Assembly: GCF_020745735.1 (NCBI RefSeq)
Contig: NC_083409.1
Location: 9,351,534 to 9,415,533, forward strand
From: Hemiscyllium ocellatum
Taxonomy: Eukaryota
DNA: 64,000 bases
Direction of reading: 5' to 3'
The notes under the pieces: model-generated
Seen by the model: only the letters and a program-made list of their open reading frames with translations
What the model was told of the DNA's origin: nothing
Databases searched by the model: none
Shown here: piece after piece, positions 10,961 through 50,500 of the stretch
How positions within the stretch are numbered: the stretch's first letter is position 1
Layout: every line of letters starts with the position of its first letter
Position numbers and translations under genes: made by a program

Positions 10961-12914
10961 CTTGAGCTGCAAACCCCAAATCCACTCCATCATGAAGGTC
11001 CCTTATTTCAGTCTCAACAACACTGTCTGTCTCTGCACGACTTCAGTCCCCTGACCACAGAAACACTAATTCCTGCTTGTCCTAACTATTGATTCCAATG
11101 TCCTCTCCCGGCTTCCTGAAGTCACATTCCATAAACCCCAACTTGTCTGATATGGAGTGGTCCCTTCCTTGTCTGACATCTGAAGTCGTTCAAGAATGAG
11201 CTCACTGCCAACCAATTGCCTCCATGGCCTCCCTCCTCCCTCAATCTGTGTCCTGCTGCAGACTCACTTTCCCTCCCTCCCCTTTCCATCTTCTGTCTCT
11301 AGTCTCCTGCCCATTGCTGCTTCCTCCATCCCACCATTGACAGCAGAGCCTTCAGGCCCCTACAGCATGCTCTCTGACCTCCTGCCCTTCATCCCTCCTC
11401 CTCCTCTCAATTGTTGTGTTACTGAATATATTGTTCAGTCCCATTGCTTTTGGTTTACTGTTCCCTTGTCATTGATTTGCTGACTTACTCTAGTGAATCT
11501 AGTCTGGGCCTGTTTCCTGAGTTGTCAAGAGTGTTTGAGAAAGCATTCTTCTGTAAACTGGATTGTCTGTTTCTCCCAGTCTTTGTGTAAAGGTGAGACT
11601 AAGTGTGTGTAAGTTCTTATACAGCACAGACAGAGGTCATTGGGCCTATTGTGACTGTTAGACAAATTAGTCCAATGAGTCCCATTTCCCCAGCCCTTCC
11701 TGTATAACCCTGCAATTGTTTCCTTTACAGCTATTTCTCCAAAGGCCCTTTTGAAAGTTGCTGTTGAATCCACTCCCACTCACCTTGCAGACAGACATCA
11801 TAAACTCGCTGGATAAAAATGTTCCTATCTTCTCTCTTGTTCTTCAGACCCTTTCTGAAATCTGTGCCCTCTGGTTACTGACCCTCCAGCCTGGAGAAAC
11901 AATTTGTCCTGTATTTACTGCATCCAAACTCTCTAATTGTGAACCCCTCATTGAGTGAGATCTATTTCCAGCACAGGGGGAGAACATTCAGCCTGTCAGG
12001 TAAATGCTGTCATTTCATGGAGCAATCCAGTCAGTCCCACCCCCTCCCCTACTCGACCCCCAGAGCCTTGCAGGTTTATTTCCATCAAGAGCCCATCCAA
12101 TCTGCCATTGCAATCACTGAGTGTCTTCACCTGAATGGCACTAATTTCCAATTTATTACCAATTGCTGTTCAAAACAAAGTTCTTTCTGACATCCCGAAT
12201 CTCTTGCCCAACAAAATGTAAGGTAACTTAAATGTGAAGATGGTATTTTGTCTCCACACGGACTGTGCGGTGGTGACCCTTACTGATACTGTCATGGACA
12301 GATACACCAGCAGCAGGCAGGTTGGTGAGGGTGATAGTGAGTATGTTGTTTCCTCTTGTTGGTTCCCTCACCACCTGCCCCAGGTCCAGTCGAGCAGCTG
12401 AATCAGGTGGAACCTGACCAGCTTGCTCAGTAGTGATGCTTCTGAGCAGCTTTTGATGGTGGACTTTGAAGTCCCTTACTCACGGTATATCCTGCATCAT
12501 TCCCACCCTCAGTGCTCCCTCCAAGTGTTGTCAAACATGGAGGAGGACTGACTGCTCCGTTGAGGTTGGAGCGGAGGGCGGTGCTATGTGGTAATCAGCA
12601 GGAGGTTTCCTTCCCCATGTTTGACCTGCTGTCATGAGGCTTCATGGGTTCCATAGTTAATGGTGAGGACTCCCAGGGCAACTCCCTTCTGACTGTACAC
12701 ACCACTGTGTTGCTTTCCCTGCTTGGTCTATCCTGCCAGTTAAAAACTGAATGAGGGAACAATTCTGTGCAGGTTTCACAGCTTGGAGACAGAGCTGCTG
12801 CTGGATTCTGTTTCTAATCTCGAAGTGCAGGCGTGTGTGTTTGTGAGAGAGTGACTGACACTTTTTCCATCACTGTGCTGTTTCTGAAAAGAAAAATCCC
12901 AGAACCAGCCTCCT

Positions 12915-13205
12915 GTGCTGTCAGGTTCCAGGGAGAGCAGACAGTTCACAGTTTTCTCCCATCTCAGTAACAAACACCCAGCTGCTCCGAGCTCCTTCTT
13001 TCACTTCCTCTTTTGGTGAATTTTCAACCTTGTGCTCTGACAGTCTTTGCAACTATTTTTTACACTGGGGCTTTCTGCTGTGGTCAGAATCTCTAATAAT
13101 AAGTGTCTAATCAGTGACAATCACAGCAGCTAAGAGCAGTCAGGACTGAAAAGCCCGGACTCACTGTGTAACATATTGGGAAGATCAAAGCCATCCTCTT
13201 CATCT
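12915..13205 (-). promoter_or_regulatory. Conserved non-repeat island with Ets-IRF composite element and E-box (left copy)
   Basis: GAGGAAGTGAAA on - strand (12999-13010), CAGCTG 12979-12984; ~90% identical by eye to 34200-34490. Confidence 0.55.
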
Positions 13206-13799
13206 CCTGCTCCAAACTCCATCCCTCTCCCTGGGGGTCTGCTGCACAACCAGACCCTTTACAAACGTGGCCACATCTCTGAGAATGATCTGACCCCTAT
13301 ATCCTCCATATTATACAGACCAGCCACTGAAAATCTCAATCATGTCTGTGGGACTCCAAACATGACCATTCCAATGTTGTGCTAGCACACATCACAGCAA
13401 TCGCCCTCCATAACCTTCAGTTCATCCCAAATTCTGATGCCTGTATTCAAACTTGCATCAAGTCCTGTTCCCCCAACCCCCTGCACCCTGTATCTACATT
13501 GGCTCCTCTCCAGCAACTCCTTGATTGTCGAGTTCTCATCCTTGTTCGCAAAACCCTCTCTGCCCTCCACCCTCCCTATCTCTGCCTCAGTCAGTGTGAT
13601 CAGCAATCTTGGATGTACAGCTCTCTGTTTCTTCATCCAAGTCATTCAGAAATATCATAAAAAGCTGAGCTCCCAGCACAGATCCCTGGGGATACCACTA
13701 TTCACATCTTCCTCACTGGAGGATGCACTCACTATTCTTCCTCTCTGCCTCCTACCTCCAAACTAATTCCTGACCAAAGACAAATACTTTTCTCTGATT

Positions 13800-24399: not shown

Positions 24400-25960
24400 C
24401 AGTCTGATATTGATCAGCTGGTAACTGGGCAGAACAATGGCAGATGGAATTTAATCCTGACAAGTGTAAGGTGATCCAGTTTGGGAGGTCTAATAAGGGA
24501 GGGATATACACAATGAAAGGCATGTGCCTTGAGTGTCCTTATGCATGAATCACAGAGGGTTGGTCTACAGGTACAACAAGCAATTAGAAAGGCAAATGGA
24601 ATTTTGTCCTTCATTGCTAAAGGGATTGAGTTTAAAAAGCAGAGAGGTTATACTGCAGCTGTACAGGATGCTGGTGAGGCCACACCTGGAGTACTTTGTG
24701 CAGTTTTGGTCTCCTTACTTGAGAAAGGATGTACTGGCACTAGAAGGGGTGCAGAGAAGGTTGACTCCAGAGTTGAGGGTATTAGCTTATGAGGAGAGAC
24801 TGGGTAGACTGGCATATATTCATTGGAACTTAGAAGAATGAGGGGGGATCTTATAGAAACATATAACATTATGAAGAGAATAGATAAGACTGAAGTAGAG
24901 AGAATATTTCCACTGGCAGGTGAAACTTGGACAAGAGGGCATCGCCTCAAAATTAAGGGGAGCAGATTTAGGATTGAATTGAGAAGGAACTTCTTCACCC
25001 AGAGGGTCAAAATCTATGAAATTTCTTGTCCAATGAAGTAGTTGATGTTTCTTCAGTAAATATTTTTAGAGCTCAGATTTTTTTTTGAAAAATAAAGGAA
25101 TTAAGAGATAAGATGAGAGTGCAGGTATGTGGATTTGAGTCCAGGAAAAGATCCGCCATGATCTTATTGCACAGTGGAGCAGGCTCGAAGAGCCAGATGG
25201 CCAACTCCTGCTCCTGGCTCTTATGTTCTCATGTTCTTGGGAGTAGTGAGGAACAAAGGGACCTTGGTGTACAAGTCCACCGATCCCAGATGGAATCAGC
25301 ACAGCTAGACAGGGTGGTGAAGAAGGCAAATGGGATGCTTGCCATCATTAGCCGGTGTGCAGAATATCGGAGTAAGGAAGTCTCATTGTTAATTTACAGA
25401 GCATTGGTTAGGCCATATCTGGAACACTGTGTACATATCACTGTTGGACAAACATGATTGGACTGGAGAGGGTGGAGAGTAGATTCACCAGGATGTTGCT
25501 TGGGATGGAAAGTGTTAGTTATGAGGAGAGAGACTTGATCAACTGAGTTTGTTTCCTGTGGAGCAGAGGAAGCATGGCGGGGGTGGGTGGGGGTGGGGGC
25601 GTGGTGGAAGGGGTTGGTGAATCTGATTCTGAGAGACATAAACAAAGTCAATTGTGATCATCTTTTCCCCATGGCAGACATGTCTATGACCGGAGGAAAT
25701 AAGCTTAATGTGATGAAAAGGTGGTTGAGAGGGAATTGAGGATTTTTTTTACCCCAGAGGGTGGTAGAAATATGGAATGTGCTGCTTGAGAAGGTGATGG
25801 AGGCAGCTCCTCTCACAACATTTAAGACACATCCAGATGAGCACATAAAATGCCAGGGCATGGAATGCTATGGACCAAGTGCAGGTAAATGGGATTAGTG
25901 CAGTTTGGTGTTTACTGATCAGCACTAACATGGTGGGCAGAAAGGCCTGTTTGTTTGCTT
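24400..25960 (+). mobile_element. Tandem 5'-truncated CR1 3' fragments
   Basis: LYRMLVRPHLEYFVQFWSPYL and RNFFTQRV motifs repeated twice. Confidence 0.85.
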
Positions 25961-27500
25961 TATGACTCTATGACTATGAAGAGAAGGAGGTGGAGACATT
26001 TTTCATGCCTTTTGAGAAGATATTTAAACAAGTGAGGCGAGGAAAAACAATGGAGTTTGCCCATGCAAAATGAACTTGGGAAGCACAAGAAGTTTCTATA
26101 CCCCTGCCAGAGGAACATTCTCAGGATCACAAGGAAGTGAAAAGGTGAAAAGCACATATGCATCGATCCCAGAAACAAACAGACAGATGTTTCAGAACTT
26201 ACAGAAACAGCCTCCACAAACTTCTACTGAGTTTGAGAGAATTCAGCAAAATAATGTTGACAGGTGGATAAGAGCATTAACAGCTGAGAATACTTACAAT
26301 GCTGTCGGAGAAATTATTCTCTGAGAAGGATTTAAAACTTTCTTCCCTACTAGAATCAGAATTCATGTAAAAGCCTGAAGGGGAAGAACAGCATGACAAG
26401 CAGCTAGAATGGTTAATGATTATAGTCTTCATTAAAGCCAAAACCTTGCAGATGCTGGAATCCAAAGTCGACAAACAGGAGGCTGGAAGAGCACAACAAG
26501 CCAAGCAGCATCAGGAGGTGGAGAAGTCACCTGATGGGCGATTAATCCAGAAGCCTTTTTCCCATCAGGCCCAGAAATGGGAGAAAAATAAAAATTGGGA
26601 GTGTGTGTGGAAGGCAGGTAGACAGGGGAGAGAATGGACAGGAGGGACCTGCCGGAGAACTACTCTTCAGATTAAGAAAGAAATTGCTGAGGCTGGAAGC
26701 GATGATCAGAAGTTGAAACGATTCTCTTGGAATAAGGTGGGCCATGTGCGTATGGAATGTTGGAAGCTGTGAGGTAAGACCCAGGAGATTTATGGGAGTT
26801 AGTAAAAATGAGTCAGAAGAGGGAATGCAAACAGATAATCCCACGGAGCAGGTTGTAGCTGTAACTATAACAAAAAGGCTGGAGGTGAATTCTGTCATCA
26901 GTAAAGGAAGTTGTAAAATAGATGAGAGGTGGACAGGATTTTTATCAAAAGGAATGGTGACTCCTTTTTCTTCAGCTAAACCCAGAATCAAACTGAGAGA
27001 TACAGGGGCAATACAATCACTTTTACTGGAGAAAGAATCGATTTTCCCTCCAGAGAGCTCAATGGATTCTAAGGTGTTCATCAAAATGTACAACTGGAAT
27101 GTGATTTGTTATCAGGAGAAGTAATTGTCGGAGTGGGGAAAATATTCCCTGTTGAGGGAGTTGATTTTCTTCTGGGGAATATTTTGTCAGGATTAAAGGC
27201 AGTATCTTCCCCGATAATTACAGAATGTCCAAAGGAGGGCCAAGAAACAGAACAATGACAGGAACAGGTTCCTGGTCTCTCTCCTTCACGTGAGGTAACC
27301 AGAGCAATGGTTAAACAAAATCCATCAATAAGGGTTGATGTGACATCACAGCAAGTGAAAGGATCGCTGAAACTTTCCAAAAGGGTGAAGATAATCCAGG
27401 TGGAGTGGTTGGTATGATGTCCCTAATTACAACAGATCCAAAAAGCAGATCCCGAATGAAATAAATGAGCACTGTCAGTTCAGACTGAGGTCGAGGCTGG
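25960..27500 (+). mobile_element. Ty3/Gypsy LTR-retrotransposon gag-protease remnant
   Basis: Degenerate zinc knuckle NKVGHVRMECWKL (~26730-26768), aspartic protease motif LRDTGAIQSLL (~26993), VTRAM-like motif at ~27295. Confidence 0.75.
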
Positions 27501-33330: not shown

Positions 33331-33927
33331 AACGTGGAACCATATTGAATAAGAGAAAAAACATTTGCCTTGGGTTAGGAATTAGTTTGGAGATAGGAGA
33401 CAGAGTGAGGGAATAATGTGTGTGTCCTCAAATGAGCAAGAGGTGAATAGTGGTGTGCCCAGGGATCCGTCCTGGGACTTTAGCATTTCATAATATTTCT
33501 GAATGACTTGGATGAAGGAATAGAGAGCCATATATCCAAGATTGCTGACCACACTGAGTGAGGCAGCTAGGAGGAGGTTACAGAGATGGGGAGGGTCGAT
33601 GGACAGGGAGGGACTTCAGAACAAGGACGAGAATTTGAAAATCGAGGTGTTATTGGACCGGGAGCCAATGTCGCTCAGTGAGGACAGTGGGGGATGGGGA
33701 TGGGATTTGTTGCGAGTTCGGATTCGGGCAGCAGAGTTTTGGTGTGAGCTGAAGTTTACAGAGGGCAGTGGCTGTGATGTGGCCCAAGACAACATTAGAA
33801 TGGTCATGTTTGGAGTCCCAAAGCAACGAGTGGGACTTTCAGTGAGTGATCTCTGTGCTGTGGAGGATTTGGGGCTCAGATCAGCCTCAAAGATGAGGCC
33901 AAGATTTTAAGGAATCTGGTATGAAAT

Positions 33928-34149
33928 AAAAGCCGAAAAAGCTGCAGATGCTGCAAATGAGGAACAAAAACAGAAATTGCTGGAAAAGCTCGGCAGGTCT
34001 GGCACCATCTGTGGAGAGAAAGCAGAGTTAAAATTTTGGGACGTGAACCTTCTCAGAACTGTTCTGAGGAAGGGTCACTCGACCTGAAAGGTTAACTCTG
34101 ATTTCTTTCCCCAGATGCTGCCAGACCTGCTGAGGTATTCTGTTTTTGT
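33928..34149. mobile_element. Palindromic Penelope-tail-derived element with back-to-back hammerhead-like cores
   Basis: Imperfect inverted arms centred on CTCAGAAC-T-GTTCTGAG (34052-34068); absent from the left arm. Confidence 0.75.
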
Positions 34150-34199
34150 AAAGAGTCTGGTTGAGCAGCAGACAGTGCTCAGGGAGAGGGATGGAGGTT

Positions 34200-34495
34200 G
34201 TACCGGGACCTGAAGGGGATGGCTTTGATCTTCCCAATGTGTTTCCCAGTGAGCCTGGCTACTCAGTCCTGACTGCTCTTAGCTGCTGTGATTGTCACTG
34301 ATTGGACACTTATTATTAGAGATTCTGACCACAGCAGAAAGCCCCAGTGTAAAAAATAACTGCAAAGGCTGTCAGATCGCAAGGTTGAAACTTCACCAAG
34401 TGAGGAAGTGAAAGAAGGAGCTCGGAGCAGCTGCACATTTGTTACTGAGATGGGAGAAAACTGTGAACTGTCTGCACTCCCTGGAATCTGACAGC
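34200..34495 (+). promoter_or_regulatory. Conserved non-repeat island with Ets-IRF composite element and E-box (right copy)
   Basis: GAGGAAGTGAAA 34402-34413, CAGCTG 34428-34433, inverted CCAAT (GATTGG) near 34300. Confidence 0.6.
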
Positions 34496-35464
34496 ACATA
34501 AGAACATTAAAACCAGGAGCAGGAGCAGGCTCTCTGGCCTCTTGGGCTGCTCTGCCATTCAGTAAGATCATGGCTGATCTTTTCATGGCATCAGCTCCCC
34601 CTTATCCACCTTTTCACCAAAACCCTTGATTCATTTACTGTTCAAAAAATTACCTAAATCAGCTTTAAAAACATTTACTGAGGAAACCTCAACGACTTCG
34701 CTGGGCAGGGAATTCCATAGATTCACCACCCTCTGGGTGAAGAAGTTCCTTCTCTATTTAGTCCTAAACCTGCACCCCCCCCCCCCCGCACCTGTGGTGT
34801 CTGTGAGTGATCCAATTATTCCCACTGCCCCCTCTCTCCCCATAACCCAGCAAATCTTTCCTTTCAGCTCGATCTCCAGCTGCCTCTTGTTGACTTGGGT
34901 CCACAGCAGAGACTGTCCCTAACCTGGGCTCCAAGCTGGCATCTCATTCATTCATTGGGAGGCAAACTGCCTGGGCTGGGAAATGGAGCTCAGGACCCTG
35001 AACATTCCCTCTCCCCTCCTGAGGGACATTTGATGCTGAGGTTTAATTCTATGGAACTTTACAATATATGCCTACAATACACACTTCTCCATTCTGTGTG
35101 TAAAAGGCTGGAGCCTGCCAGCAGGATATTCAACTGCAGGAGCCGTCATCAATTTGACCAATTCTGACCACACCCACTCTCCGTAAACTTTCAACTAATT
35201 ACTAAAATCAAATCTGTCAATCTCCTCCTTGGTATGAGACAGGGAAGGGGCCATTTCATTCCAGACAATTTGGAATTTATGGAGCACAGATGGAGTAAGC
35301 TGAGAGAGGACATCAGAATGTTGGAGTTTGGAGGTGGGATGAGCAGGAATAAGAGTTTCTGTGGTCAAGGGGCTGATGTAGTGCAGAGACAAACAATGTA
35401 GTGGAGATTGAAATAAGAGACCTAGGTGATGGAGAGGAAGTGGGGTTTGAAGCTCCAATACTGG

Positions 35465-37010
35465 AGGGTCCAGTGGGAAAGAAGCTCAGGCTTATTGCTG
35501 TCCATTGGACATTCCAGTGGGATGGAGGCCCATGTTTCCTGATCTCTGTTGGAGGTTCCAATTGAGTCCCATGGAATTGGAATGTTGGCATTTCTTGCAG
35601 CAATTGGAATCTTGGTATTTATTATAAAAGGACTGAATTACAGAAATAAAGAAATATTGTGACAATTCTATTAGGCATTGGTGAGACCACATCTGAAGCA
35701 TTGTGTCCAGTTGTGGTCTCCTTACTTGGTGAAGGATATGGTGGCACTGGATTCAGTTCAGAGGATGTTCACCAGACTGATTCCCCGGATGAAAGGGCTG
35801 CCATATGAGGAATGGTTGAATAGCTAGGGCTTGTACTCACTGGAATTCAGTTGTATGAAGGGGAGATCTGAGTGAAGTATATAAGATGCTAAAGGAGATT
35901 GATAGGGCAAGCATTGAACAGATGTACTCTCTTGTGGGCCAGTCTCGAACAAGAGGTCATAGACATAGAGTGAGAGGAGGTATGTTTAAAACTGAGATGA
36001 GGAGAAACTACAGGTGACAGAGTGGTGCAGTGGTGAGCACTGCTGCCTCACAGTGCCAGGGCCCCAGGTTCGACTCCACCCTCAGGCAACTGCATGGAGT
36101 TTGCACATTCTCCCCCTGTCTGTGTGAGCTTCATCTGTGTGCTCTGATTTCCTCCCACAGTCTAATGATGTACACGTTCAGAGGATTGGCCATGCTAATT
36201 TACCCATAGTGTCCAGGAAAGTGTAGGTTAGATTCATTAGTCATGGGAAATATAGGGTTACAGGGAAAAGGTTCCAGAATGGCTCTGGGTGGAATGCTCT
36301 TTGAAGGGTTGGTGTGGACTTATTGGGCTGAATGGCCTGGTTTCATACTGTATGGAATCTGTTCCATTCCAACTACTTCTCGCAGAAGGTTGCGAATCTG
36401 TGGATGTCAGTGCGCACCATCATCTCCACCCCCCCTCCCCACTCCCCCCCCCCCTCCCCACCCCCTTCCTCAAGCACAGTGGAGGCAGAATCAATCAACA
36501 GATTCAAGAAAGAAACAGATATCTTTCTGATGAAAAGCAGGATAGAGGGCAATAGGTAGCCGTCTGGAAAGTGGAGAGGAGGTTAAGTTCAGCCATGATC
36601 ATGTTAAATAGGAAACGGGTTTGATTACCTATTCCTGCTCCTCATTCCGAAGTTCAATCTTGCAATGAGATCCTTGTTTACTGGTCTGTATTGGAGGATC
36701 CATTCACAAAGAGTCACATCTTTACTGGTCTGTATTGGAGGAGCCAGTTTGAAGCTCGTCTATATTTACTGGTCTGCACTGGAGAGTTCAAAGAAATGGA
36801 GGCCTTTCTCTCCTGGTTTCTATTGGAGGGCCCAGTAGGAATAAGGTCCATGTTAACTAGGCTCTGCTCGAGTATTCAGTGGGAAATAGATCCATATTTA
36901 CTGGTCTCCATTGGAGGCTCCAGCGGCAAAGATGCCTATGTTTAATGGTCTCTACTGGAGAGTTCTGTGGGAATGAATTCCATGCTTACTGGTCTCCACT
37001 GGACAGTCCA
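35465..37010. repeat. Right copy of the 44-bp array (35465-35580 and 36670-37010), split by CR1 and SINE insertions
   Basis: Repeated TTTACTGGTCT cores (reverse complement of the left-array core); + strand CR1 and a SINE at ~35590-36660. Confidence 0.8.
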
Positions 37011-37477
37011 GTGGGACATGGATACTGTAGTGAGTGTGGGGCTCATTTCCTTTCTGTAGTAACTGTGTGATGGTCCAATCCTCATACCAATAAAACTGGA
37101 GCTTGACCATGGAAGGGAAAGGTGAGGGGAAAGGATTGGAACATGTTGTGAATGGATAGGATGGGTCAATGGGTCAGATCCTGTCCTATCCCTCCAGGTC
37201 ATACTGATGGCCTGAGGATCTCCTCCCTCTGCTGGGCTTTCATGGAATGAGGTTTGTGTCCAAACCAGTCCCCAGGAAGAATGGGCCAACAGCACAGAAT
37301 TGCCCTTCATTTGACAAGAATCTGACCGTCTTCCTGAGAGAGGCCAAACCCTGGTCAATGTGGGAAATGGGCCTTTATTCCAGGAGTAGACATACTCCTG
37401 GTGTCAAGGGTTAACATCCATTAGATTTGGAGGAGATATAACCTGTATTTAACTTTTACCACTTGGGACCTTGTTGG

Positions 37478-37494
37478 AAAGGCAGAGAGTGTGC

Positions 37495-37530
<36 letters not shown>

Positions 37531-38763
37531 ATGTTGACGAGAGAGACATAGAAGGGCAGGGTGTGAAAGTGAGAGAGAGCAGGATAAAGAATCTCAGGCA
37601 GTGTAAGATGAGTAAAAGCGGGGGGAGAGAGAGAGGTAGAGAGAGGTAGAGATGGTGGAGTTGAAGAATAGAGATAGAGCGAGATAGAGTATGAGACAGT
37701 GTGACTGAGAGAGAGGGGACAGAGAGAGAGACAGACAGACAGAGTAGGTGTGAGACAAAGAGTAGAGGCAATCCAGTGAAAGAGAGAGACAGACGTGCAG
37801 AGATGTTCTGGTCACCATATTATGAGAAAGATATGACTGTACTCGAGATGGTGCAAAGATTTCCCAGGATGCTGCCTGGCCTGGAGGGTGTGAGCTATGA
37901 GGAAGGATTGGAAAGTTTGGGATTGTTTCTCTTGGAGCAGTGAAGGTTGAGAGGGAACCTGCTGAAGGGCAAAAAGATTATGAGAGGCAGGGATAGAGTG
38001 GACAGGAAGGCAACTTTTTCCATGAATAGAGGGATCAATATCCAGGGACAGAGATTGGAGATTACACAGACATACAAAGATAGAAATAGAGAGCAGGAGT
38101 AGGGTTAGGTTTAGGGTTAGGGTTAGGGTAAGGGTTAGGGATTGGCCCTGTGAGTCTGTTCTGCCATTCAATATGACCATGGCTGATCCTCTCCCTCAAT
38201 GCCAAGCTGGGATTGATGTTGCTAGATCATTGATGATCAGTAGAGACTTGTTAAATGCTGTTCATGTCATTGAACTTTTGATTGAGAGAGACACAGAAGA
38301 CACACACAGACAGAGACAGAGAGCAAGTGTACATTGTGAGATTGAGTGAGAGAGGGCGAGGCATTTAATTGCTGCCCCAGGACTCACTGTTCCAATGTCC
38401 TGGAATAATGCCTGCTAGAGAGTGACTGGAGGGAGGGAAACAAAGAGAGAGTGAGGCAATTAGAGATTGAGGGTATAAGGAGAGAATGAGTGAGGAATTA
38501 GGTAGTAATATAAGTGAAGGAGAAGAATGAATGATCAGAAAGAGAGAGAGAGAGAGACCAACCAAAACAGAAGGGAGGGAGATAAACAGAATGTCAAACA
38601 TACATGGAAAAAAGGAAAGATATAAGTAGTTATATAATTGGGAGAGGACAGAGTTGGAGACGGAAATAGAAAAAGAGAGAGAAAGTCAACGAATAACAAG
38701 AACGTATACAAGAGAAGGGTGAGAAAGAGAAAAAAGGGAAAAGGGAGAAAGAAAAGAAAGGAT

Positions 38764-38790
<27 letters not shown>
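37478..38790 (+). repeat. GA-rich low-complexity tracts upstream of the V promoter
   Basis: (GA)n and purine-rich runs 37478-37800 and 38280-38790; mirrored as CT-rich 8300-8845 and 7331-7360. Confidence 0.85.
38100..38140 (+). repeat. Interstitial telomere-like (TTAGGG)~7
   Basis: tagggttaggtttagggttagggttagggtaagggttaggg. Confidence 0.9.
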
Positions 38791-38794
<4 letters not shown>

Positions 38795-38887
38795 AAGTGT
38801 GAGGGGCTGACGTGGCTCTCTCTGCCTGATGCCATTTACATACTGAGGAACACCCAGTCAGACTCTCACAGGCTGCAGCTTTATAAA
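38791..38887 (+). promoter_or_regulatory. V promoter: PU-box, CRE/UPRE-like site, variant octamer, TATA
   Basis: GAGGAAGTG 38791-38799, TGACGTGG 38808-38815, ATTTACAT 38834-38841 (octamer ATTTGCAT with one change), TATAAA 38882-38887; order and distance to ATG match Ig light-chain promoters. Confidence 0.8.
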
Positions 38888-38947
38888 GCAGAGCCCAGTG
38901 AAGGGAGAGTTTATCAGGAACCAGGCACAGGGACAGGAGCACACACC

Positions 38948-38996
38948 ATGATTACACACATCCAGCTGATCTGGCCCCTGGCATTCTGTGTCGCAG
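38948..38996 (+). CDS. IGKV: Ig kappa-type light chain leader exon (MITHIQLIWPLAFCVA-G)
   Basis: ATG at 38948 (cacaccATG), 16 codons + 1 nt, GT donor at 38997; hydrophobic signal peptide; phase 1 joins in frame to the V exon at 39183. Confidence 0.95.
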
Positions 38997-39182
38997 GTAC
39001 AAATCTCTCTCCTTCCACCTTGAATCTTTCGCTGCTCTCCATTTCACTCCAATTCCACTGACTTGTGATTGAAGGGAAAATGCTGAAACCAGAGGAATGC
39101 TCAGTGTCTCCAACAATCTCTCATTTGACCGGCTCTTTCTGTGACAGTTCTGACTTCACTGTGTTTCTCTCTGACCCCTCAG

Positions 39183-39493
39183 GTATCAATGGGGAGATTA
39201 TCATGACCCAGTCTCCCCCGGTGCTGTCAGTGGAACTGGGCCAGACTGCAACCATCACCTGTACGGCCAGTCAAAGCATTAGCAGCTACCTCAGTTGGTA
39301 CCAGCAGCGAGAAGGTCAGAAACCCTCTCTCCTGATCTATGCTGCAACATCTCGATTCACAGGAGTCTCCGAGCGATTCACCGGCAGTGGATCAGGGACC
39401 AGTTACACCCTGACAATCAGCAACGTTCAGAGTGAGGATGTCGCTGACTATTACTGTCAGCAGGATTACAGCTGGTATAGCAGCTCCGCTCAA
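39183..39493 (+). CDS. IGKV: Ig kappa-type V exon, unrearranged, open ([23 protein letters not shown]...WYQQ...[19 protein letters not shown])
   Basis: Pyrimidine tract + AG acceptor at 39181-39182; both V-domain Cys, [12 protein letters not shown] and DYYC motifs; no stops; ends directly at a heptamer. Confidence 0.97.
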
Positions 39494-39521
39494 CACAGTG
39501 ATACAGAGCCATACCAAAACC
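39494..39521 (+). other. V recombination signal, 12-bp spacer
   Basis: CACAGTG (39494-39500), 12-nt spacer ATACAGAGCCAT, nonamer ACCAAAACC (one mismatch to ACAAAAACC). Confidence 0.97.
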
Positions 39522-39992: not shown

Positions 39993-40027
39993 GGACACGT
40001 TCGGTAAAGGAACCAAGCTCAGACTGA
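39993..40027 (+). CDS. IGKJ: Ig kappa-type J segment (DTFGKGTKLRL)
   Basis: FGxG motif right after the 23-RSS; consensus donor A|GTAAGT at 40028, phase 1, compatible with the C exon. Confidence 0.97.
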
Positions 40028-40400
40028 GTAAGTAAACCTCAATCCTCTGTTATTAACCCTTTCAATACTGAAACACACTTTCTAAAATACAGTTACTGAT
40101 TTGTTGAAGGTGTTAGTGGGGAGCTGCAGTGAACGAAATGGTTGATTAAGGAGCACTGTGTCTAACAGTTGTCCAACCGTACCACTTCAGTTCCATTGCC
40201 CCCTTTAAGAAGCAAGATATAAGTCAGTCAGTTTTACTCACCGTGTGGAGGAGCTCTGTCCATTTGCAGCCTGTGGTCCCATTCCTGCAGCATGGAGTGA
40301 AATCAGTGAGTAGCCTCCTGCCAGTCTCAGTGTGACGGACACGGGGCAGAGTTTGATGTGAGCTCTGGCTCCCTGTCCCAGTCTCTGATCTCACTGACCT

Positions 40401-40432: not shown

Positions 40433-43400
40433 CAGTGAGACACCGAGCTCCCACCTCCCCCAGCTTTAACTCTGCTCAATCACACAATCACAGAATAGTT
40501 ACAGTGCACAAGGAGGCCATTCCGTCCATCCTGTCTGTCATGGTTCTCCGACTGAGCAATTCACTGAGTGTCATTCTCCTGCCTTCTCCCTGTCACCCTG
40601 CACATTGTTCCTTTTCAAATAACAGTCTCATTCCCTTCGGAATGTTTTAATTGAAGCTGCCTCCACCACACTCTTAGGCAGTGCATTCCACACCTTAACC
40701 ACCCACTGGCTGAAAATGTTGTTCCCCCTCTCACTTTTGTTACTTTTACTTATTACTTTAAATCTGTGTTCTCTCGGTCTCAATCCTTTCTCAATTGGGA
40801 ACATTTTCTCCCTATTTACCCTGTCCAGGCCCCTCCTGGTTTTAATTCCTCAAACAAATCTCCTCTCAGCCTTCGCCAAAGAAGACAGTCCCAAATTCTC
40901 CAATCAATCTGTATAACTGATGTTCCTCATCCCTGGAAGGATCTTCAGGAATATTTTTTGCCATTTCTACAAAACTTCAGCTCCTTCCTGAATTATTCAC
41001 ATTTTCTATGACCCTCATGATTTTATAAACCTTTACAAGGTCACTCCTCAGACTCTTACGTGTCAGAATAAAAAGTTTCAGCTTTTCCAGCTTCTCATCG
41101 TCATGGAGTCATACAGCGTGGAAACAGACCTTTCAGTTCAACTTGTCCATACTAACCAGATATCCTAAATCACCTCATCCCATTTGCCAGCATTTTGCTT
41201 ACATTCCTCAAAACCCTTCCGATTCATGTACCCATCCCAATGCGTTTTAAATGCTGTAATAGTATCTGCCTCCAATACTTACTCTGGCAGCTCGATCCAG
41301 ACACATACCACCCTCTGTGTGACAAGTTACCCCTCAGGTCCCTTTTGAATATTTTGCCTCTCACCTTAAACCTATGCCATCTTGTTTTGGACTCCCTTTC
41401 CCAAAGAAAAGGCCTTGGATATACACCCTGTCCATGCCCCTCATGATTGTATAAACATCTATAAGGTCACCCCGAAGCCTTAGATGCTGTAGGAAAAATA
41501 GACCCAGTTTCTTCAGCCTTTCCCTATAGCTCAAACCCTCCAATTCCTGGCCATGTCCTTGTAAATCTTTTCTGCAGCTTTATAAGTTTAACAGCATCCT
41601 TCCTATTTTCAAGGTGATCAGGATTGTTCACATTATTGCCAAAGTGGCCTCACTAATCTCCTGTACAGCTGCAACATGATGTCCCAACTCCTATACTCAA
41701 AATAGTGACCAATAAAAGCAAGTGTACCCAACACCTTCTTCATCACCCTGTCTACTTGTGACCCCACTTTCAAGTAATAATGCACTTGCATCTTCAATCC
41801 GAGGTCTCTTTGTTCAGCAACACTCCACAGGGCCCTCCCATTAACTGTCTAACTCCTGCCCTGGGTTGCCTTTCCAAAATGCAACATCTCACAGTTATCT
41901 AAACTGAACTCCATATGCTACACCTCTGCCCATTGCCCCATCTGATGAAGGTCCCGCTGTACTCTGAGATGAATTTCTTCGCTATCCACTATCGTACCAA
42001 TTTAGATATCATCTACAAACTTACTGTAACTCCTATATTCACATCCAAATCATTTCTATAAAATAGTGAATCCAGCACCAATGTTAGTGGCACACAGCTA
42101 TTCACAGATCTCCAGTCTGAAAAGCAACCTTTTACCACCACTCCTGTCTCCTATCTTCAATCCAATTTTTTTATCCCAATGGCTCACTCCCCCTGGATCC
42201 CATGTGGTCTAACCTTACTAACCAGTCTATCATGTGGAACCTTGTCAAAAACTTTACTGAAGTCCATATTGACAATGTCTATTGTTCTATCTCCATAAAT
42301 CTTCTTTGTCACCTCCTCAATCAAATTCAGGAGACATGATTTCCTATGCATAAAACCACATTGATTATCCAAAGAATGTAAATCCTATCCCACAGAATCC
42401 ACTCCAACATCTTACCCAACACTGACATCAGGCTCACTGGTCTATAATTCCCTGGCTTTTCCTTACAGTCTTTCTTTCTTAAATAATGGCATAACATTAG
42501 CCAACCTCTCTGGTTCTCCAGCACCTTACCCATAGTTGTCAGTGATACACATATCTCAGTAAGGGGCCCAGCAATCTCTTCCCTAGTTTGCCACAATGTT
42601 CTGGGATACACCTGATCAGGTCCTAGGGTTTATCTACTACTTTTATGTGTTTTCAGATCTTGAGCGTCTCCTCATTTGTGTGTGGTCTCTTTTCAAGACA
42701 TCACTATTTTTCCAAATTCCCTAGCTTTCTCCACAATATATACTGACCTGAAATATTTGTTTGGGATCTCACCCATGTCTTGTGTCTTACCAAAATATAG
42801 CACTCACATGTATCTGAATTAAACTCCATCTGCCATTCCTCAGCCCACTGGCCCAGTTGATCAAGATTCCATTGTATTCTTAGACAGCCTTCTTCACTGC
42901 CAATGATTAGATTAGAGCCTCTACGGGGTCGAAACAGGCCCTTCTGCCCAAAAAGTCCTCACCGATCCTCCGAAGAGTAACCCACCCAGACCCATTTCCC
43001 TCTCAGTAATGCATCTAACACTGTGGGCAATTTAGCATGGCCAATTCACCTGACCTGAACATCTTTGGACCATGGGAGTAAACCAGAACACCCGGAGGAA
43101 ACCCACGCAGACACAGGGAGAATGTGCAAACTCCACACAGACAGTTACCCAAGGCTGGAATCGAACCTGTGACCCTAGCTCTGAGAGGCTGCAGTGCTAC
43201 CCACTGAGCCACCGTGCTGCCCCACCTGAGCCACCACTGAGCCACCGATGCCACCTGAAAATTCACCTGAACACACTCTCACAACTCTGGGCCCTTCCTG
43301 CCCATTACACTGCTACTATCCCAGTCTATATTCAGAAGCTAAAGACCGCCCCGCCCATTTATAACAACTCTATCATATTTGCAGGTCTCTGTAAATTCAT

Positions 43401-45272
43401 GCATTTGTATTCTTCCACATCCTTCCCACTGGGAGGTGACTTATTGACTGAACTGAGGATTCTGTGTTCCTTTGTGTTCCTCTTTGACATTCTCTCCTGG
43501 TTCGCACAGCCCTGCCAAGTTAGTTTAAACCCTCTCTAACTGCATGAGTAAACCACCTCACAAAAATCCAAAGACCTCCCTCATGGATCCTCTTTCCAGC
43601 CCCACAGTCACCTGTGCTCACCTCCTGATTCTATTCTCACCTGCATGTAGCACTGGAAGTCATCCGGAGATTCCTCCTTTTCAGTTCCTGCTGCTAATTC
43701 CCTCCAGAGCTCCCAACCTTCTGACTGCAGGACCACGTTCCTTTTTCTCCATCCATCACTGGGACCAATGTGGACTATGACTGCTGGCTGTTCCCCCTCT
43801 CCCCTCAGGGTGCTCTGCAGCCGCTCAGTGACATCCTTGACCTTGGCATCAGAGAGACAACACACCATCCTGGATTCCCATCTGCAGCTGCAGAAACACC
43901 TATCGATGCCCTCACTCTCAAATATCCTCTCACTATCGCTCTTCCAGTTTTCCTTCTGCCCTCCTGTATAGCTGAGCCCCCCCCCCCACCGTGGTGCCAG
44001 GGACTTGGCTCTGGCTGCACTCCCCAGATGAACCATCATTCTCATCAGGATTCTGAACTGAATCCTAGTTGGAGAGTGGGAGGCACTCAGGGATTCCTGT
44101 ACTAGCTGCCTGGTCCTTTTGGACTGTCTGCTGCTCCCCCATTCCCTCTCTCCCTGCATACTCTGAAGGTGCAGAGTGACCACATCTAGAAACGTGCTCT
44201 CCACGGAGCTCTCAGCCTCACAGATGCTCTCCACTGACACCAGCTGCTGCTCAAGCTCCAGAACCTGGAGCTCCAACTGCTGTCACTGACCACACTTCCT
44301 GCACTCATGGTATTCCAGGAGCTGGGAAGCATTCTGAAGTTCCCACCTAAATGCACACTCTCTCCACTCTTTGGTTATCTGTTGATAAACAGCTACAGCA
44401 GGGCTCACAGTCCAGTAAGTTCAGTGTTCCAGGGTTTTGGGAAACTCTCCAGAAGACTTTAAGAAATAGGAGCAGAAATCAGCCATTCAGCCCATTGAAT
44501 CTGCTCTGCAATTTGATCTTGGCAGATATGCTTCTCAACCCCATTCTCCTGCCTACTCCACAGGAATTTTCCATCCCCTTAACAATCACAAACCTATCTA
44601 TCCCTGTCTTAAATACACTCAGTGACTTGGCCTCCACTGCCCTCTGCAGCAATAAGTTCAACAGATTCACCACCCTCTGGCTGAAGAGATTCACCCTTAT
44701 CTCAACTCTAAAGAGTCGGCCCTTCATTCTGAGGCTGTGCCTTGGTTACCGAGTCTCTCCTGTTTTTGGAAACATCTTCTCTGCATCCACTCTATCCAGG
44801 CCTGTCAGTATTCTGTAAATTTCAATAAGATCCCTCTTCATCCTTCTAAAGTCCATTGAGTACAGACCCAGAGTCCTCAAGCACGCCTGATATGACAAGC
44901 CCTTCATTGCCAGGATCATTCTTGTAAACCCCTCCAATGCCAGTACATTGTTCTATTAAAATATGGGTCCCAAAAATGCCCACAATATTCCAAATACAGT
45001 TTGACCAGAGCCTTACACAGCCTCAGCAGTACATCTCTGCTCTTGTATTCTGGCCCTATTGAAATGAATGCTATCATTTCATTTGCCTTCTCAAGCACAA
45101 ACTGGACCTGCCTGTTAACCTGAATGAGGTTTGTGCTTTAGATTTCCAAAGGCTTTCCTCATTTAGCAAACAGTCTTTGTATTTCTTCTTGTGTTCTATC
45201 TGCCACTTCTTTGCCAACTCTCAGAGCCTATTAGGACCTTTTACAGCCTTCCCACTTCCTCAACACTACCTT

Positions 45273-47525: not shown

Positions 47526-50500
47526 TTTTCTGTCTCCTGATTGATTTCCTTCCCCACACCCTGATTACTGCTTGGAGACCTGGACATAACTTGCATCAGA
47601 TTCTTTATTGTGGTTCCTCAGCTCTACCCACACAGATTCTACACCTTCTGACTTCTTGCTATTGATTGAATTTTATTTCACACTAACAAGGCAACTCTTG
47701 CCCCTCTGCCCATCTGCCTGTCCTTTTGATAGGACATGGATCCTTGGATATTTAGTTCCCAGCCCAGACCCCCTTACAGCCATGTCTCTGTGATACCCAC
47801 AACATCGTACCTACCAGTTTCAATCTGCACTACAAGCTCATTGTGTATACTGTGTGCATTTAAGTACAACACCCTCAGTCCTGCATTGACTGCCCTCCTT
47901 CTCATCATTGTCCTCTTATCTGCTGTGCTTGAAGTTCGACTCTTGTTCCTTTCTGTACTCTCTGTCCTAGGTTGTCTTCTAGAAACTTGAATAACCTCTC
48001 CTGAGCCCTCCTCCACTTTAACTAGTTTAATTCCTTGGACACTCAATTTACCTTGATTTATTGCGTCACTTTGTCTACCTTATTCGGAATGCTTTGTGCA
48101 TTTAGTTACAAACTCTTTAAATTTATTCTATTATTGATTTTCCCTGCACTTCTTTAGTTCCTTTGATATTCAAAAAATCCGTCCCCATCTTTTATTTTCT
48201 GGTAACAATCAATCCCACCACTAACCAACAATCGACCTTCTCCTTCACCTTCTGTTTTCTCATTTTCCATCCAACTGAACCAAATTACTTTATGTGTCGA
48301 TTGACCTAAGGCATGGTGGCTCAGTGGTTAGCACCGCTACCTCACAGCGCCAAGGATACGGGTTCAATTCCTGCCTTGGGAAACTGTCTGTGTGGTGTTT
48401 GCACATTGTCCCTGTGTCTGTGTGGGTTTCCCCCAGGTGCTCTGGTTTACTCCCACTGTCCAAAGATGTGCAGGCCAGGTGAATTGGCCATTCTAAATTG
48501 CCTACAGTGTTAGATGAAATAGTCAGGAGTAAATGTATGGAATGTTTCTGGGTGGGCTGCTGTTTGGAGAGTTGGTGTGGACTTGTCAGGCTGAACTGCC
48601 TGTTTCCACACTGGAGGGAATCTAATCAGGCCAATATTTCTCATTATTGCTCTTTGATCTCTTGCTTCTACTTGGATCCTGCTGTGTAGAAACTGGCTGC
48701 CACCTTCCTGACATTGCAACAGTGACTCCTTGTCAAACAAAACTGTCTGTAAATGTCTTTGGAAGAGCCTGAAATGTTAAGGGCTGGATTGATGCCCATA
48801 TGCTCTAAACTTTTCTGATTTACATATCCATGCCTTTTAAATGTTTTAATCATACCAGCCTTCACCACTTCTTCTGGCAGCCCATTTCATACATTTAACA
48901 CCATCTGAATGAAAACGTTGTTCTTTAGGTCCCTTTTAAATCTTTCCCCTGTCACCTTCAACCTATGCCCTCCAGTTCTGGACTCCCCCACTCTGGAGAA
49001 AAGATCTTCTCTATTCACCCTATCTATGCTGCTCATGATTTTATAAACCTCCATCCGGTCACCCATCAACCTGCAATGATCCAGGGAAAACAGCCTCAGC
49101 CTATTCAGCCTCTCCCGATAGCTCAAACCCTCCAACCTTGGCAACATCCTTGTAAATCTTTTCTGAACCATTTTAAGGTTCACAACATTTTTCCTCCAGC
49201 AGGGAGACCAGAATTACACACAGTATTCCAAAAGTGCCCTAACCAATGTCTGTCAGCCACAAGAGCTCCCAACTCCAATACTCAATGCACTGACCAATAA
49301 AAGAAAGCAAACCAAATGACATTGTCACCCCCCCCCCCCCCCACCCCCCCCACCTACCTGCAACCTCACTTCCAGTGAAGTATTCTTTTTTTTTGGATGA
49401 ACTGAGAGTCTTCCAGTTGTGAAAGATGCCATTCCATGGACTTTTGGATGAAGAGCAGGCAGTTCCCCCTGGTGTCCCTAATCAATATTTATCCCCCAGT
49501 CAAAATCAATGAAAATCTGTTTCTCTTCTTTTTATCATATTGTGTTTGGGATCTCGCTGTGCACAGTCTGCAGGAAAGATCCATTGGGACATCTTGATTT
49601 GGGGACAGGTGCTTCACAAATGCAAGTCTTTCTTTAAGTTTGAAGTCTCCTGATCCGAACACTCACCCATTGTCTGTGCACTCTCACCTTCCGGGGGCAT
49701 GGGGTCATTAGGAGCAGTGACCCAAAGGACACTGAGACTCTTTGCAGCCTCACCCTTGACCTCAGCCCAGCAGTGTGCAGCAAGGTTTGAAATGTAATCT
49801 AGAACCTTCTACACAGACACCCCAATGTGACTCATTCCCGAAGTGTGTGGATCCGAGTCTGCTCCAAAGTTCTCGGATAAATTTCTCCTGATCTGTGGGT
49901 GATCGGAGGTTTGTTAAAGAAGTATCAAGATCCGTCCCACTTTCCAGCTCTTGCTCCATAGCTCTGGAGGTTTCACTGTTTGAAGTGAATACCCAAGTGT
50001 TTTTTTCAAAGTGATGAGGGTTTCTGCCTCTCCCACCCTTTCAGGCTGTGAGTCCCACATCCCACCAAGCTCTGGGTGAAAACAAATACCCTCAACTCCC
50101 CTATAATCCTGCCCCCAACTGATTTCAATCTCTCCCCATGGTTATTGCCCTCTGTGCTGGTGGAAATCAGTCCTTCCTACCCACTCTGTCCAGGCCCCTC
50201 ATCATTTTACACACCACCATCAAATCTCCCCTCAGCCTCCTGTGTTCCAACAAAAACACTCCCAGCCAATCCAAACATTCCTCAAAACTCAAAGTTCCCA
50301 TTCCAGACAAACTCTTCCTCTGTCCTGGTCTCCTGTGGGATCACATCCTTCCTATAATGTGGTGACCAGAACCGTACACTGTTCTCTCACTGTGCTCTAA
50401 CTGGGGTTTTATACAGTTCCAGAATAAACAAACTCCTTGCTTTCACAGTCAACCAAAAATGAGATAAGGGAGGTGATGGTCTAATGGTGTTATTGCTGAG

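What the first reader, a model, noticed from the sequence alone, without database searches (positions are those of the whole stretch)
34200..34495. Candidate upstream B-cell enhancer: conserved island with PU.1/IRF composite site plus E-box at fixed spacing
Seen: ~290 bp of non-repeat DNA ~90% identical between arms (12915-13205) amid ~75% flanks. Both copies keep GAGGAAGTGAAA and CAGCTG exactly 14 nt apart; AAGTGAAAG also fits IRF/Blimp-1 sites. Known: Ets-IRF composite elements (GGAAnnGAAA) with E2A boxes drive mammalian kappa 3' and lambda enhancers. Inference: each shark cluster may carry its own enhancer 4.6-5.9 kb 5' of V, an upstream position unlike mammals. I am not aware of it being described.
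Basis: partly seen in the sequence, partly recalled or inferred. Interest (0 to 1): 0.7.

Follow-up and report, generated by a model that had tools for sequence, protein, structure and literature searches.

The report
Candidate upstream enhancer, shark kappa clusters
A 354-base non-coding block about 4.5-6 kb upstream of the V gene in most of this shark's ~265 kappa-type antibody light-chain mini-loci carries the binding-site set of bird and mammal light-chain enhancers and is kept alike partly by copying between clusters, so it is a good but untested candidate for each cluster's own B-cell switch.

Summary
The island is 34145-34498 (+) and 12914-13265 (inverted), 354 bp rather than about 290. 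The two copies are 89.9% identical amid 74-75% upstream flanks. GGAAGTGAAA and CAGCTG lie 14 nt apart in both.

It is not a dispersed repeat. About 230-255 copies exist, all listed ones inside the kappa light-chain array (contig C9, 5.6-24.3 Mb, plus small contigs), against about 265 C exons. Each paired copy lies 4.8-7.1 kb upstream of a V exon on the same strand. Both motifs at exact spacing survive in 202 copies, and the spacer changes more often than the motifs. A canonical MEF2 site also lies in the best-kept core. MEF2, EICE and E-box are three of the four motifs of the Ig-lambda enhancer.

The main caveat is that the conservation is confounded. Island variants are shuffled among clusters (gene conversion, P<0.005), and recent copies evolve about as fast as their flanks. 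The J-C intron holds patches of 96-98% identity. RNA contigs show no island-specific transcription. No activity or chromatin data exist.

Verdict: a cluster-specific conserved non-coding module, probably regulatory (about 0.5). Enhancer function is unproven. The scan found the same element before on other DNA of this genome (s1-228455, s1-228462).

The parts
34145..34498 (+). Island copy B: conserved non-coding block, 4.45-4.8 kb upstream of the leader ATG of the intact V-J-C cluster
   Evidence: 89.9% identical to copy A. Across 18 subfamily representatives, mean pairwise identity is 90-98%, against 75-86% upstream. More than 40 copies at 95-100% exist in the genome.
12914..13265 (-). Island copy A: the same block, about 5.7 kb upstream of the germline-joined VJ pseudogene of the head-to-head partner cluster
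34404..34413 (+). Ets-IRF composite element GGAAGTGAAA (EICE consensus GGAANNGAAA)
   Evidence: 7 matches in the window against 3.66 expected, two of them in the islands. The run AGGAAGTGAAA is invariant in 37 distinct copies; only 2% of island 10-mers are fully invariant.
34428..34433 (+). E-box CAGCTG (CASSTG class), 14 nt after the EICE
   Evidence: the composite pattern occurs only in the two islands, against 0.10 expected per window. Both motifs are intact at this spacing in 202 genomic copies.
34310..34319 (+). Canonical MEF2 consensus TTATTATTAG (YTAWWWWTAR) in the best-conserved core
   Evidence: 3 matches in 64 kb, two of them in the two islands. One singleton variant among 37 distinct copies. 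It lies in the 34305-34336 32-mer, which is found 237 times.
34323..34333 (+). Invariant run TTCTGACCACA holding a Runx/CBF-like ACCACA core
   Evidence: 11-nt invariant run. Naming the motif rests on my own knowledge, and a 6-mer is not significant alone.
12979..13008 (-). EICE + 14-nt spacer + E-box of copy A, identical to copy B
13093..13102 (-). MEF2 consensus of copy A (reported on the + strand as CTAATAATAA)
33921..34144 (.). Hairpin-like repeat insertion specific to the B-type subfamily. It makes the sharp 5' edge of copy B and is not part of the element.
   Evidence: Absent from the other subfamilies, where the upstream block abuts the island. Depth is 25,000-94,000 in contigs of other runs. 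It matches itself in reverse.
34499..34797 (.). Second repeat insertion. It makes the 3' edge of copy B and is not part of the element.
   Evidence: Skipped in the L017-type copies and in a contig of run X4. A related copy lies at 24957-25237.
38949..39493 (+). Leader (ATG 38949), intron and V exon of cluster B, the presumed target. J is at 39994-40030 and C at 51906-52205.

Best explanation
The island is a cluster-specific cis-regulatory module of the kappa-type light-chain mini-loci, most likely an enhancer-type element. Each V-J-C cluster carries one copy 4.5-7 kb upstream of its V promoter.

Inferred mechanism: in B-lineage cells an Ets factor of the PU.1/SpiB group recruits IRF4/8 to GGAAGTGAAA. 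An E protein binds CAGCTG 14 nt away, and MEF2 and possibly Runx bind the core about 70-90 bp upstream. The complex then opens the cluster and activates the V promoter, and with it possibly rearrangement and hypermutation.

Shown here: the element exists, belongs to the clusters, is better kept than the DNA around it, carries these motifs, and exchanges sequence between clusters by gene conversion.

Inferred only: every step of binding and activity.
For: - Unit part of the clusters. Genome counts are 227 and 237 for the two island 32-mers and 265 for a C-exon 32-mer, each at up to 3 mismatches, with 0 for reversed controls. All listed copies lie on C9 5.6-24.3 Mb or on small contigs that also carry V and C.
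- Fixed position. Of the first 42 exact cores, 28 have a listed V exon 4.76-7.13 kb downstream on the same strand, although the V list is cut at 150.
- Conservation across all deep subfamily comparisons. Mean K2P distance is 0.061 in the island against 0.161 in the adjoining upstream block, and the island is lower in 110 of 136 pairs. The profile peaks at 97-98%.
- Motif grammar. The EICE-N(5-30)-CASSTG pattern occurs only in the two islands (0.10 expected). Two of the three MEF2 consensus sites in the window are in the islands. Buerstedde et al. report conserved E-box, NF-kB, MEF2 and PU.1-IRF4 motifs in chicken, mouse and human Ig-lambda enhancers (PMC3972084).
- Footprint-like pattern. The EICE is one of the three longest invariant runs. 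Both motifs are intact in 202 copies, but the whole 30-mer in only 126. So 76 copies changed only in the 14-nt spacer, against roughly 25-35 changed in the 16-18 motif positions.
- Ongoing constraint in intact clusters. B-type recent copies have fewer segregating sites in the island than in the flanks (0.042 against 0.073, p=0.035).
- Other organisms. Contigs from runs of three other organism labels cover the island at 96%, 94% and 90% identity, with no listed difference inside 34402-34433. DNA runs of four labels hold 33-63% of its 31-mers.
- Other kinds of feature excluded. It is not coding, not a structured RNA and not a dispersed repeat.
Against: - No functional data of any kind.
- Conservation is confounded by gene conversion. 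49.5% of informative site pairs in the island fail the four-gamete test, against 11.6% upstream. Tree-like simulations never reach the island's value (P<0.005) but fit the upstream block.
- The island tree is star-like, with terminal branches as long as those of the flanks. Within close groups the island is no better kept than its flank, for example L031 against L047: 94% island, 95% flank.
- The A-B island identity (90%) equals that of the repeat-laden J-C intron (84-90%, with patches of 96-98%).
- The EICE consensus is not enriched in the window (7 against 3.66 expected).
- There is no NF-kB site.
- The CCAAT-like ATTGG is lost in the A group.
- Copy counts are not independent events.
- Island depth in RNA-type contigs equals that of neighbouring unique intergenic DNA, so no enhancer or exon transcript is seen.
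- The other organisms are coded, so their evolutionary distance is unknown.
Confidence: 0.5

Rival explanations
1. The island is a neutral patch kept alike by gene conversion. It has no function of its own and is a tract that is repeatedly copied between clusters (concerted evolution). The motifs are chance matches carried along.
For: - There is a strong recombination signal in the island only.
- The tree is star-like, and recent rates equal those of the flanks.
- In the dead A-type clusters the island is not lower in diversity than its near flanks.
- Patchy 96-98% identity also occurs inside repeat-derived J-C intron DNA.
- Only 3 CpG are present, so the homoplasy is not recurrent CpG mutation.
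Against: - The same 354 bp stands out in every comparison between four deep subfamilies, which needs several independent tracts with the same ends.
- The island sits 4.5 kb from the nearest exon, with 75% DNA on both sides. Nothing but its own similarity can seed conversion, and that similarity had to be kept first.
- The joint presence of MEF2, EICE and CASSTG is unlikely by chance.
- The spacer varies more than the motifs.
Confidence: 0.3
2. The island is a regulatory element of another class: a boundary or insulator between the two divergently oriented clusters, or the promoter of a non-coding (germline) transcript that opens the cluster, rather than a classical enhancer.
For: - The islands lie between head-to-head V genes, about 21 kb apart, one per cluster.
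- The longest invariant run is a G-rich 13-mer, CAGGGAGAGGGAT, unrelated to the EICE.
Against: - No joint or start at the island is listed, and depth equals the intergenic background in Ig-rich RNA-type runs. However, contigs cannot show starts, and the raw-read run gave nothing.
- I saw no CTCF-like consensus by eye; this was not tested with a matrix.
- The motif set is that of lymphoid enhancers.
Confidence: 0.12
3. The island is a relic of an old mobile element or exon that was part of the ancestral cluster, with no present role.
For: It has many copies, and in copy B it has sharp edges.
Against: - The edges in B are made by later insertions, and other subfamilies run on without a break.
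- The only copy found outside the array is one chance motif hit on C2.
- Depth in other runs is about 10-25, against 10^3-10^5 for true repeats next to it.
- There are stops in all six frames, and variable sites show no 3-base periodicity (37/35/32).
- There is no Rfam match and no fold signal.
Confidence: 0.05

Closest known systems
Ig-lambda enhancers of mammals and chicken (Elambda2-4/3-1, human IgL enhancer, chicken cIgLambdaE, also active as a hypermutation-targeting DIVAC element; PMC3972084)
   Same: A short module with a MEF2 site, a PU.1-IRF4 composite site and a CASSTG-type E-box after the composite site. GGAAGTGAAA fits the composite consensus exactly.
   Different: Those enhancers lie 3' of C, while this block lies upstream of V. 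No NF-kB site is present here. There is one copy per mini-locus, about 230 copies in all. No sequence homology beyond the motifs was tested. No activity is known.
Mouse and human Ig-kappa 3' enhancer (PU.1-IRF4 composite element plus E-box)
   Same: An Ets-IRF composite site with a nearby E2A-type E-box in a kappa-type locus.
   Different: Position (3' of C against 5' of V), and a single enhancer for a translocon locus against one per cluster. Binding and function are unknown here.
Teleost light-chain enhancers in cluster-type loci (Atlantic cod CL-VL intergenic enhancers; from my own knowledge, not found in the searched library)
   Same: A cluster-type organisation in which regulatory DNA lies in the intergenic space next to V.
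   Different: The cod elements were defined by reporter assays.
Concerted evolution (gene conversion) in tandem multigene families
   Same: Mosaic variants shared among paralogues, a star-like tree and collapsed deep branches.
   Different: Here the exchange is confined to a 354-bp non-coding patch flanked by DNA that evolves in a tree-like way.

Membership tests
EICE-containing Ig light-chain enhancer (kappa 3' / lambda type) | Ets-IRF composite element GGAANNGAAA | tested here: met
   GGAAGTGAAA lies at 34404-34413 and 12999-13008. It is invariant in 37 distinct copies and intact together with the E-box in 202 copies.
EICE-containing Ig light-chain enhancer (kappa 3' / lambda type) | E2A-type E-box (CASSTG) close to the composite site | tested here: met
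   CAGCTG lies 14 nt downstream in both copies. The composite pattern is expected 0.10 times per window and is seen only in the islands.
EICE-containing Ig light-chain enhancer (kappa 3' / lambda type) | MEF2 site (lambda enhancers) | tested here: met
   A YTAWWWWTAR match lies at 34310-34319 and 13093-13102, two of the three matches in 64 kb.
EICE-containing Ig light-chain enhancer (kappa 3' / lambda type) | NF-kB site | tested here: not met
   GGGRNNYYCC has one match in the window, at 62863, and none in the island.
EICE-containing Ig light-chain enhancer (kappa 3' / lambda type) | Location in the J-C intron or 3' of C | tested here: not met
   The island lies 4.45-5.7 kb 5' of the leader ATG in both arms, and 4.8-7.1 kb 5' of the V exon in 28 other clusters.
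EICE-containing Ig light-chain enhancer (kappa 3' / lambda type) | Binding of PU.1/SpiB with IRF4/8, E2A and MEF2; B-cell-specific enhancer activity; open chromatin | not testable with these tools
   No chromatin or binding data are available. The raw-read single-cell RNA run laid nothing, even on V.
EICE-containing Ig light-chain enhancer (kappa 3' / lambda type) | Conservation above neutral DNA across paralogues and species | tested here: inconclusive
   The island is 2.6-fold slower than the adjoining block in deep comparisons. It is not slower on recent branches, it is confounded by gene conversion, and it equals J-C intron DNA in identity. Other organisms hold it at 90-96%, but their names are coded.
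Dispersed repeat / transposable element | Copies scattered outside the Ig array; terminal repeats, target-site duplications or element ORFs | tested here: not met
   All listed copies lie in C9 5.6-24.3 Mb or on small V/C-bearing contigs, and the single outside hit (C2) is a chance motif match. Depth is low in other runs. There is no ORF.
Structured non-coding RNA | Rfam match or folding energy below shuffles | tested here: not met
   There is no Rfam match in the island. The z-scores are +0.55 and -1.10.
Protein-coding exon | Open frame kept in the copies; third-position bias of changes | tested here: not met
   There are 2-9 stops in every frame of both copies. Variable columns number 37/35/32 by phase.

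The most novel reading that the evidence does not exclude
Each of the roughly 230 kappa-type mini-loci of this shark carries its own upstream enhancer with the MEF2 / PU.1-IRF / E-box grammar of tetrapod lambda enhancers. That grammar would then predate the split of cartilaginous and bony vertebrates. The copies are kept uniform by gene conversion, and the element is the cis-switch through which one or a few clusters are chosen for rearrangement, expression and hypermutation in a B cell.
Probability: 0.3. Interest if true: 0.75.

Novelty: new member of a known kind. Interest (0 to 1): 0.5.

Why it matters
How sharks regulate hundreds of separate Ig mini-loci is an open question: which clusters open, rearrange, are expressed and hypermutate in a given B cell. 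The searched literature describes no cis-element beyond the V promoter octamer for shark light chains.

This is a defined 354-bp block with named, mutable sites and natural variants in the same genome. About 35-50 copies have altered motifs, and about 10-15% of clusters seem to lack the block. That makes the question directly testable by ATAC-seq, reporter assays and repertoire data.

If active, it would show that the lambda-type enhancer grammar is as old as jawed vertebrates. It would also show that gene conversion homogenises regulatory DNA as well as coding DNA in Ig cluster families.

Tried and rejected
Association with V was therefore shown from coordinate lists only, and the V-to-C parts of other clusters could not be compared.
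- The raw-read single-cell RNA run X22 laid no read at all, even on V, so it is no test of expression.
- The RNA-type contig runs are only guessed to be RNA. Leader-V splicing is seen in X1, but island depth equals that of neighbouring unique DNA, so they give no evidence for or against transcription of the island.
- Rfam, RNA folding and coding tests were negative.
The comparison was made from three shorter counts instead.
- EICE enrichment in the window is not significant.
- The NF-kB search found no site in the island.
- Literature searches found no shark light-chain enhancer and did not find the cod enhancer paper.
- Rejected: dispersed repeat, exon, structured RNA.

Full report
**What is there**

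The window (G000, contig C9, 9,351,534-9,415,533) holds two kappa-type light-chain clusters arranged head to head.
- Arm B (plus strand) has an octamer-like box and TATA near 38,830-38,890 and a leader ATG at 38,949. Its V exon runs to the heptamer at 39,494, J is at 39,994-40,030 and C at 51,906-52,205.
- Arm A (minus strand) carries the germline-joined VJ pseudogene noted earlier by the scan. Its C lies off the window.

Self-comparison gives a collinear inverted duplication (chained).
- From V to C the arms are 84-90% identical, and the promoter/leader/V part is 92%.
- Upstream of the promoter every collinear block is 74-75%, with one exception: 12,914-13,265 against 34,498-34,145, at 89.9% over 355 columns with a single 1-base indel.
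The island is 354 bp rather than about 290.
- GAGGAAGTGAAA (34,402-34,413) and CAGCTG (34,428-34,433) are 14 nt apart, and the same 30-mer is in arm A.

**What makes the edges**

In copy B the island is bracketed by two later insertions.
- 33,921-34,144 is a hairpin-like element, very abundant in other runs. It is absent from all other subfamilies, where the upstream block runs straight into the island.
- 34,499-34,797 is another abundant repeat. It is skipped in the L017-type copies and in a contig of run X4.

These points rest. The island is therefore not an inserted unit. It is a stretch of an older continuous sequence that has changed less than its surroundings.

**Is it a repeat unrelated to Ig? 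No.**

- Searching the whole assembly with either copy gives about 250 first-look candidates. The 40 scored ones are 92-100% identical.
- Counts at up to 3 mismatches, all with reversed-pattern controls of 0:
  - 227 for the EICE-to-E-box 32-mer
  - 237 for the core 32-mer 34,305-34,336
  - 265 for a C-exon 32-mer
- All listed places are on C9 between 5.6 and 24.3 Mb or on small contigs. At least 150 V and at least 150 C exons of this type also lie there.
- Of the first 42 exact cores on C9, 28 have a V exon from the truncated list 4.76-7.13 kb downstream on the same strand. Several of the rest have a listed C at 15.5-19 kb. The chance rate for the V association is about 1%.
- Islands mostly come as minus/plus pairs 20-25 kb apart, so the head-to-head pair is the old duplication unit.
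- The window's own pair recurs at least 10 times at 99-100% identity.
- Roughly 85-90% of clusters thus carry the block.

**Is it better kept than its surroundings?**

I clustered the 59 fetched copies (3.35 kb each) into 18 subfamilies.
- In a multiple alignment the mean pairwise identity is 75-86% in the adjoining upstream block and 90-98% in the island. It peaks at 97-98% at 34,265-34,344 and is poor downstream.
- Pairwise, mean K2P is 0.161 upstream against 0.061 in the island. The island is lower in 110 of 136 pairs.
- The ratio is not constant with depth. Between the four deep groups the flank is 80-86% and the island 91-97%. Within groups the island is as diverged as the flank or more so, for example L031 against L047, L051 and L055: flank 95%, island 93-94%.
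- The trees say the same. The upstream block has long internal and short terminal branches. The island is star-like, with terminal branches as long as those of the flank and poorly supported nodes.

**Gene conversion**

- In the island 49.5% of pairs of informative sites fail the four-gamete test, and the consistency index on its own best tree is 0.44. In the upstream block the figures are 11.6% and 0.76. Neighbouring island sites are more compatible than distant ones (permutation p<0.001).
- I simulated evolution on each segment's own tree, with and without strong rate heterogeneity. The simulations never reach the island's value (0 of 200 each, at most 0.485) but fit the upstream block (P 0.11-0.70).
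- The island has only 3 CpG, so recurrent CpG mutation is not the cause.
- Island variants are therefore exchanged among clusters. This collapses deep divergence and inflates recent divergence, so conservation alone overstates constraint.
- In the A-B comparison the island's identity equals that of the J-C intron, which is full of shared repeat remnants and has patches of 96-98%.

**Why I still favour function**

- The same 354 bp stands out in every deep comparison. It lies 4.5 kb from the nearest exon between 75% DNA, so only its own retained similarity can seed conversion.
- Among 37 distinct copies, 250 of 354 columns are invariant, but only 2% of 10-mers are fully invariant. The three longest invariant runs are CAGGGAGAGGGAT (13 nt), AGGAAGTGAAA (the composite site) and TTCTGACCACA, which has a Runx-like core.
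- Genome-wide, both motifs at exact spacing survive in 202 copies, plus one chance hit on C2. The whole 30-mer survives in 126. So 76 copies changed only in the 14-nt spacer, in at least 13 different ways. About 25-35 copies changed in the motif positions.
- That makes a motif position roughly two to three times less often altered than a spacer position. Copies are not independent events, so this is suggestive only.
- A canonical MEF2 consensus occurs three times in 64 kb, and two of those are in the two islands, inside the best-kept core.
- The pattern EICE-N(5-30)-CASSTG occurs only in the islands, against 0.10 expected.
- MEF2, PU.1-IRF4 and E-box are three of the four motifs reported as conserved between chicken, mouse and human lambda enhancers, with a further E-box after the PU.1 site in mammals (PMC3972084). 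The fourth, NF-kB, is absent here.
- Among recent B-type copies (intact V) the island has fewer segregating sites than the flanks (0.042 against 0.073, p=0.035). In A-type copies (dead VJ) it does not. This fits constraint only where the gene is alive, but it is weak evidence.

**Other organisms and RNA**

- Runs of four organism labels hold 33-63% of the island's 31-mers as DNA. Three further labels hold 7-33% in runs guessed to be RNA.
- Laid on 33,500-39,499, one contig each from X1, X4 and X6 covers the island:
  - X1: 96% (9 differences in 233)
  - X4: 94% (21 in 332)
  - X6: 90% (35 in 357)
- The X4 contig continues into 34,797-35,028 at 91%, skipping the repeat. No listed difference falls inside 34,402-34,433, but the table is truncated.
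- Names are coded, so I cannot say how distant these species are. Paralogy also clouds the comparison.
- Island depth (10-24) equals that of neighbouring unique intergenic DNA, while V reaches 10^3-10^6. No joint from the island is listed. So there is no sign of an exon or a strong transcript.
- The only raw-read RNA run laid nothing, even on V.

**Other kinds of feature**

- No Rfam match falls in the island. The weak miRNA-like hits lie in the inserted hairpin repeat.
- Folding is no better than shuffles on either strand.
- There are stops in all frames and no codon periodicity.

**Known or new**

- Searches of the held literature found no described shark light-chain enhancer.
- The NS4 paper mentions only the octamer and 'other regulatory sequences' near V.
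- The shark IgH exclusion paper invokes a promoter-enhancer complex without naming an element.
- The scan itself noted the same block in two other windows of this genome. Follow-up agents there also read it as a candidate enhancer.
- My work agrees on presence and motifs. It adds the copy counts, the MEF2 site and the spacer-versus-motif comparison. Its main caveat is the evidence for gene conversion.

**Verdict**

The island is a real, cluster-specific, conserved non-coding module with lambda-enhancer-like grammar.
- It is probably regulatory (about 0.5 for an enhancer-type element).
- A serious rival (about 0.3) is that it is a neutral patch homogenised by conversion.
- Function is wholly untested.

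Noticed in passing
G000 contig C9, about 5.6-24.3 Mb, plus contigs C10-C13, C291, C375, C388, C456, C597, C628, C694, C741, C1873: There is a very large kappa-type light-chain array. A C-exon 32-mer matches 265 times at up to 3 mismatches. At least 150 V and at least 150 C exons were scored, most with open frames.
   Followed up: partly
window 1-48300 and its copies (for example C9:11.49-11.52 Mb, 13.28-13.31 Mb, 14.69-14.71 Mb, 16.55-16.58 Mb, 17.01-17.04 Mb; C10, C13, C456, C628, C694): The whole head-to-head pair (dead germline-joined cluster plus intact cluster, islands 21.2 kb apart) recurs at least 10 times at 99-100% identity. This is either very recent segmental duplication or assembly redundancy.
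   Followed up: partly
window 33921-34144: A 224-bp hairpin-like insertion specific to the B-type subfamily is flanked by an imperfect 16-17 bp direct repeat. Its depth in contigs of other runs is extremely high (25,000-94,000). It gives weak miRNA-like Rfam hits (mir-4524, E 0.011, far below gathering score). It is probably a MITE-type element.
   Followed up: partly
window 40201-40400, 40526-40725, 44001-44575, 44926-45175, 47526-47950: The J-C intron has patches of 95-98% identity between the arms amid an 84-88% background. The first two lie 0.2-0.7 kb after J, where an intronic enhancer would sit. Others lie in repeat-derived DNA. They are either further conversion tracts or further conserved elements.
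   Followed up: no
window 43679-43688 (-), 57388-57397 (-), 57942-57951 (+), 26133-26142 (+): Further EICE consensus matches occur here. One is in the J-C intron inside a LINE-like ORF, two are 5.2-5.7 kb 3' of C, and one (identical GGAAGTGAAA) is in the DNA between the clusters. The total is not above chance.
   Followed up: no
L054 (G000:C9:12838433-12841785); cores at C9:12838978 (-) and 12840191 (+): Two island copies lie in inverted orientation only about 1.2 kb apart, one of them partial (256 bp). Each has a different spacer variant. This looks like a local inverted duplication of the block.
   Followed up: no
window, whole: The NF-kB consensus GGGRNNYYCC is found once in 64 kb, where dinucleotide shuffles give 26 +/- 6. 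This is a striking depletion or a quirk of the scan.
   Followed up: no
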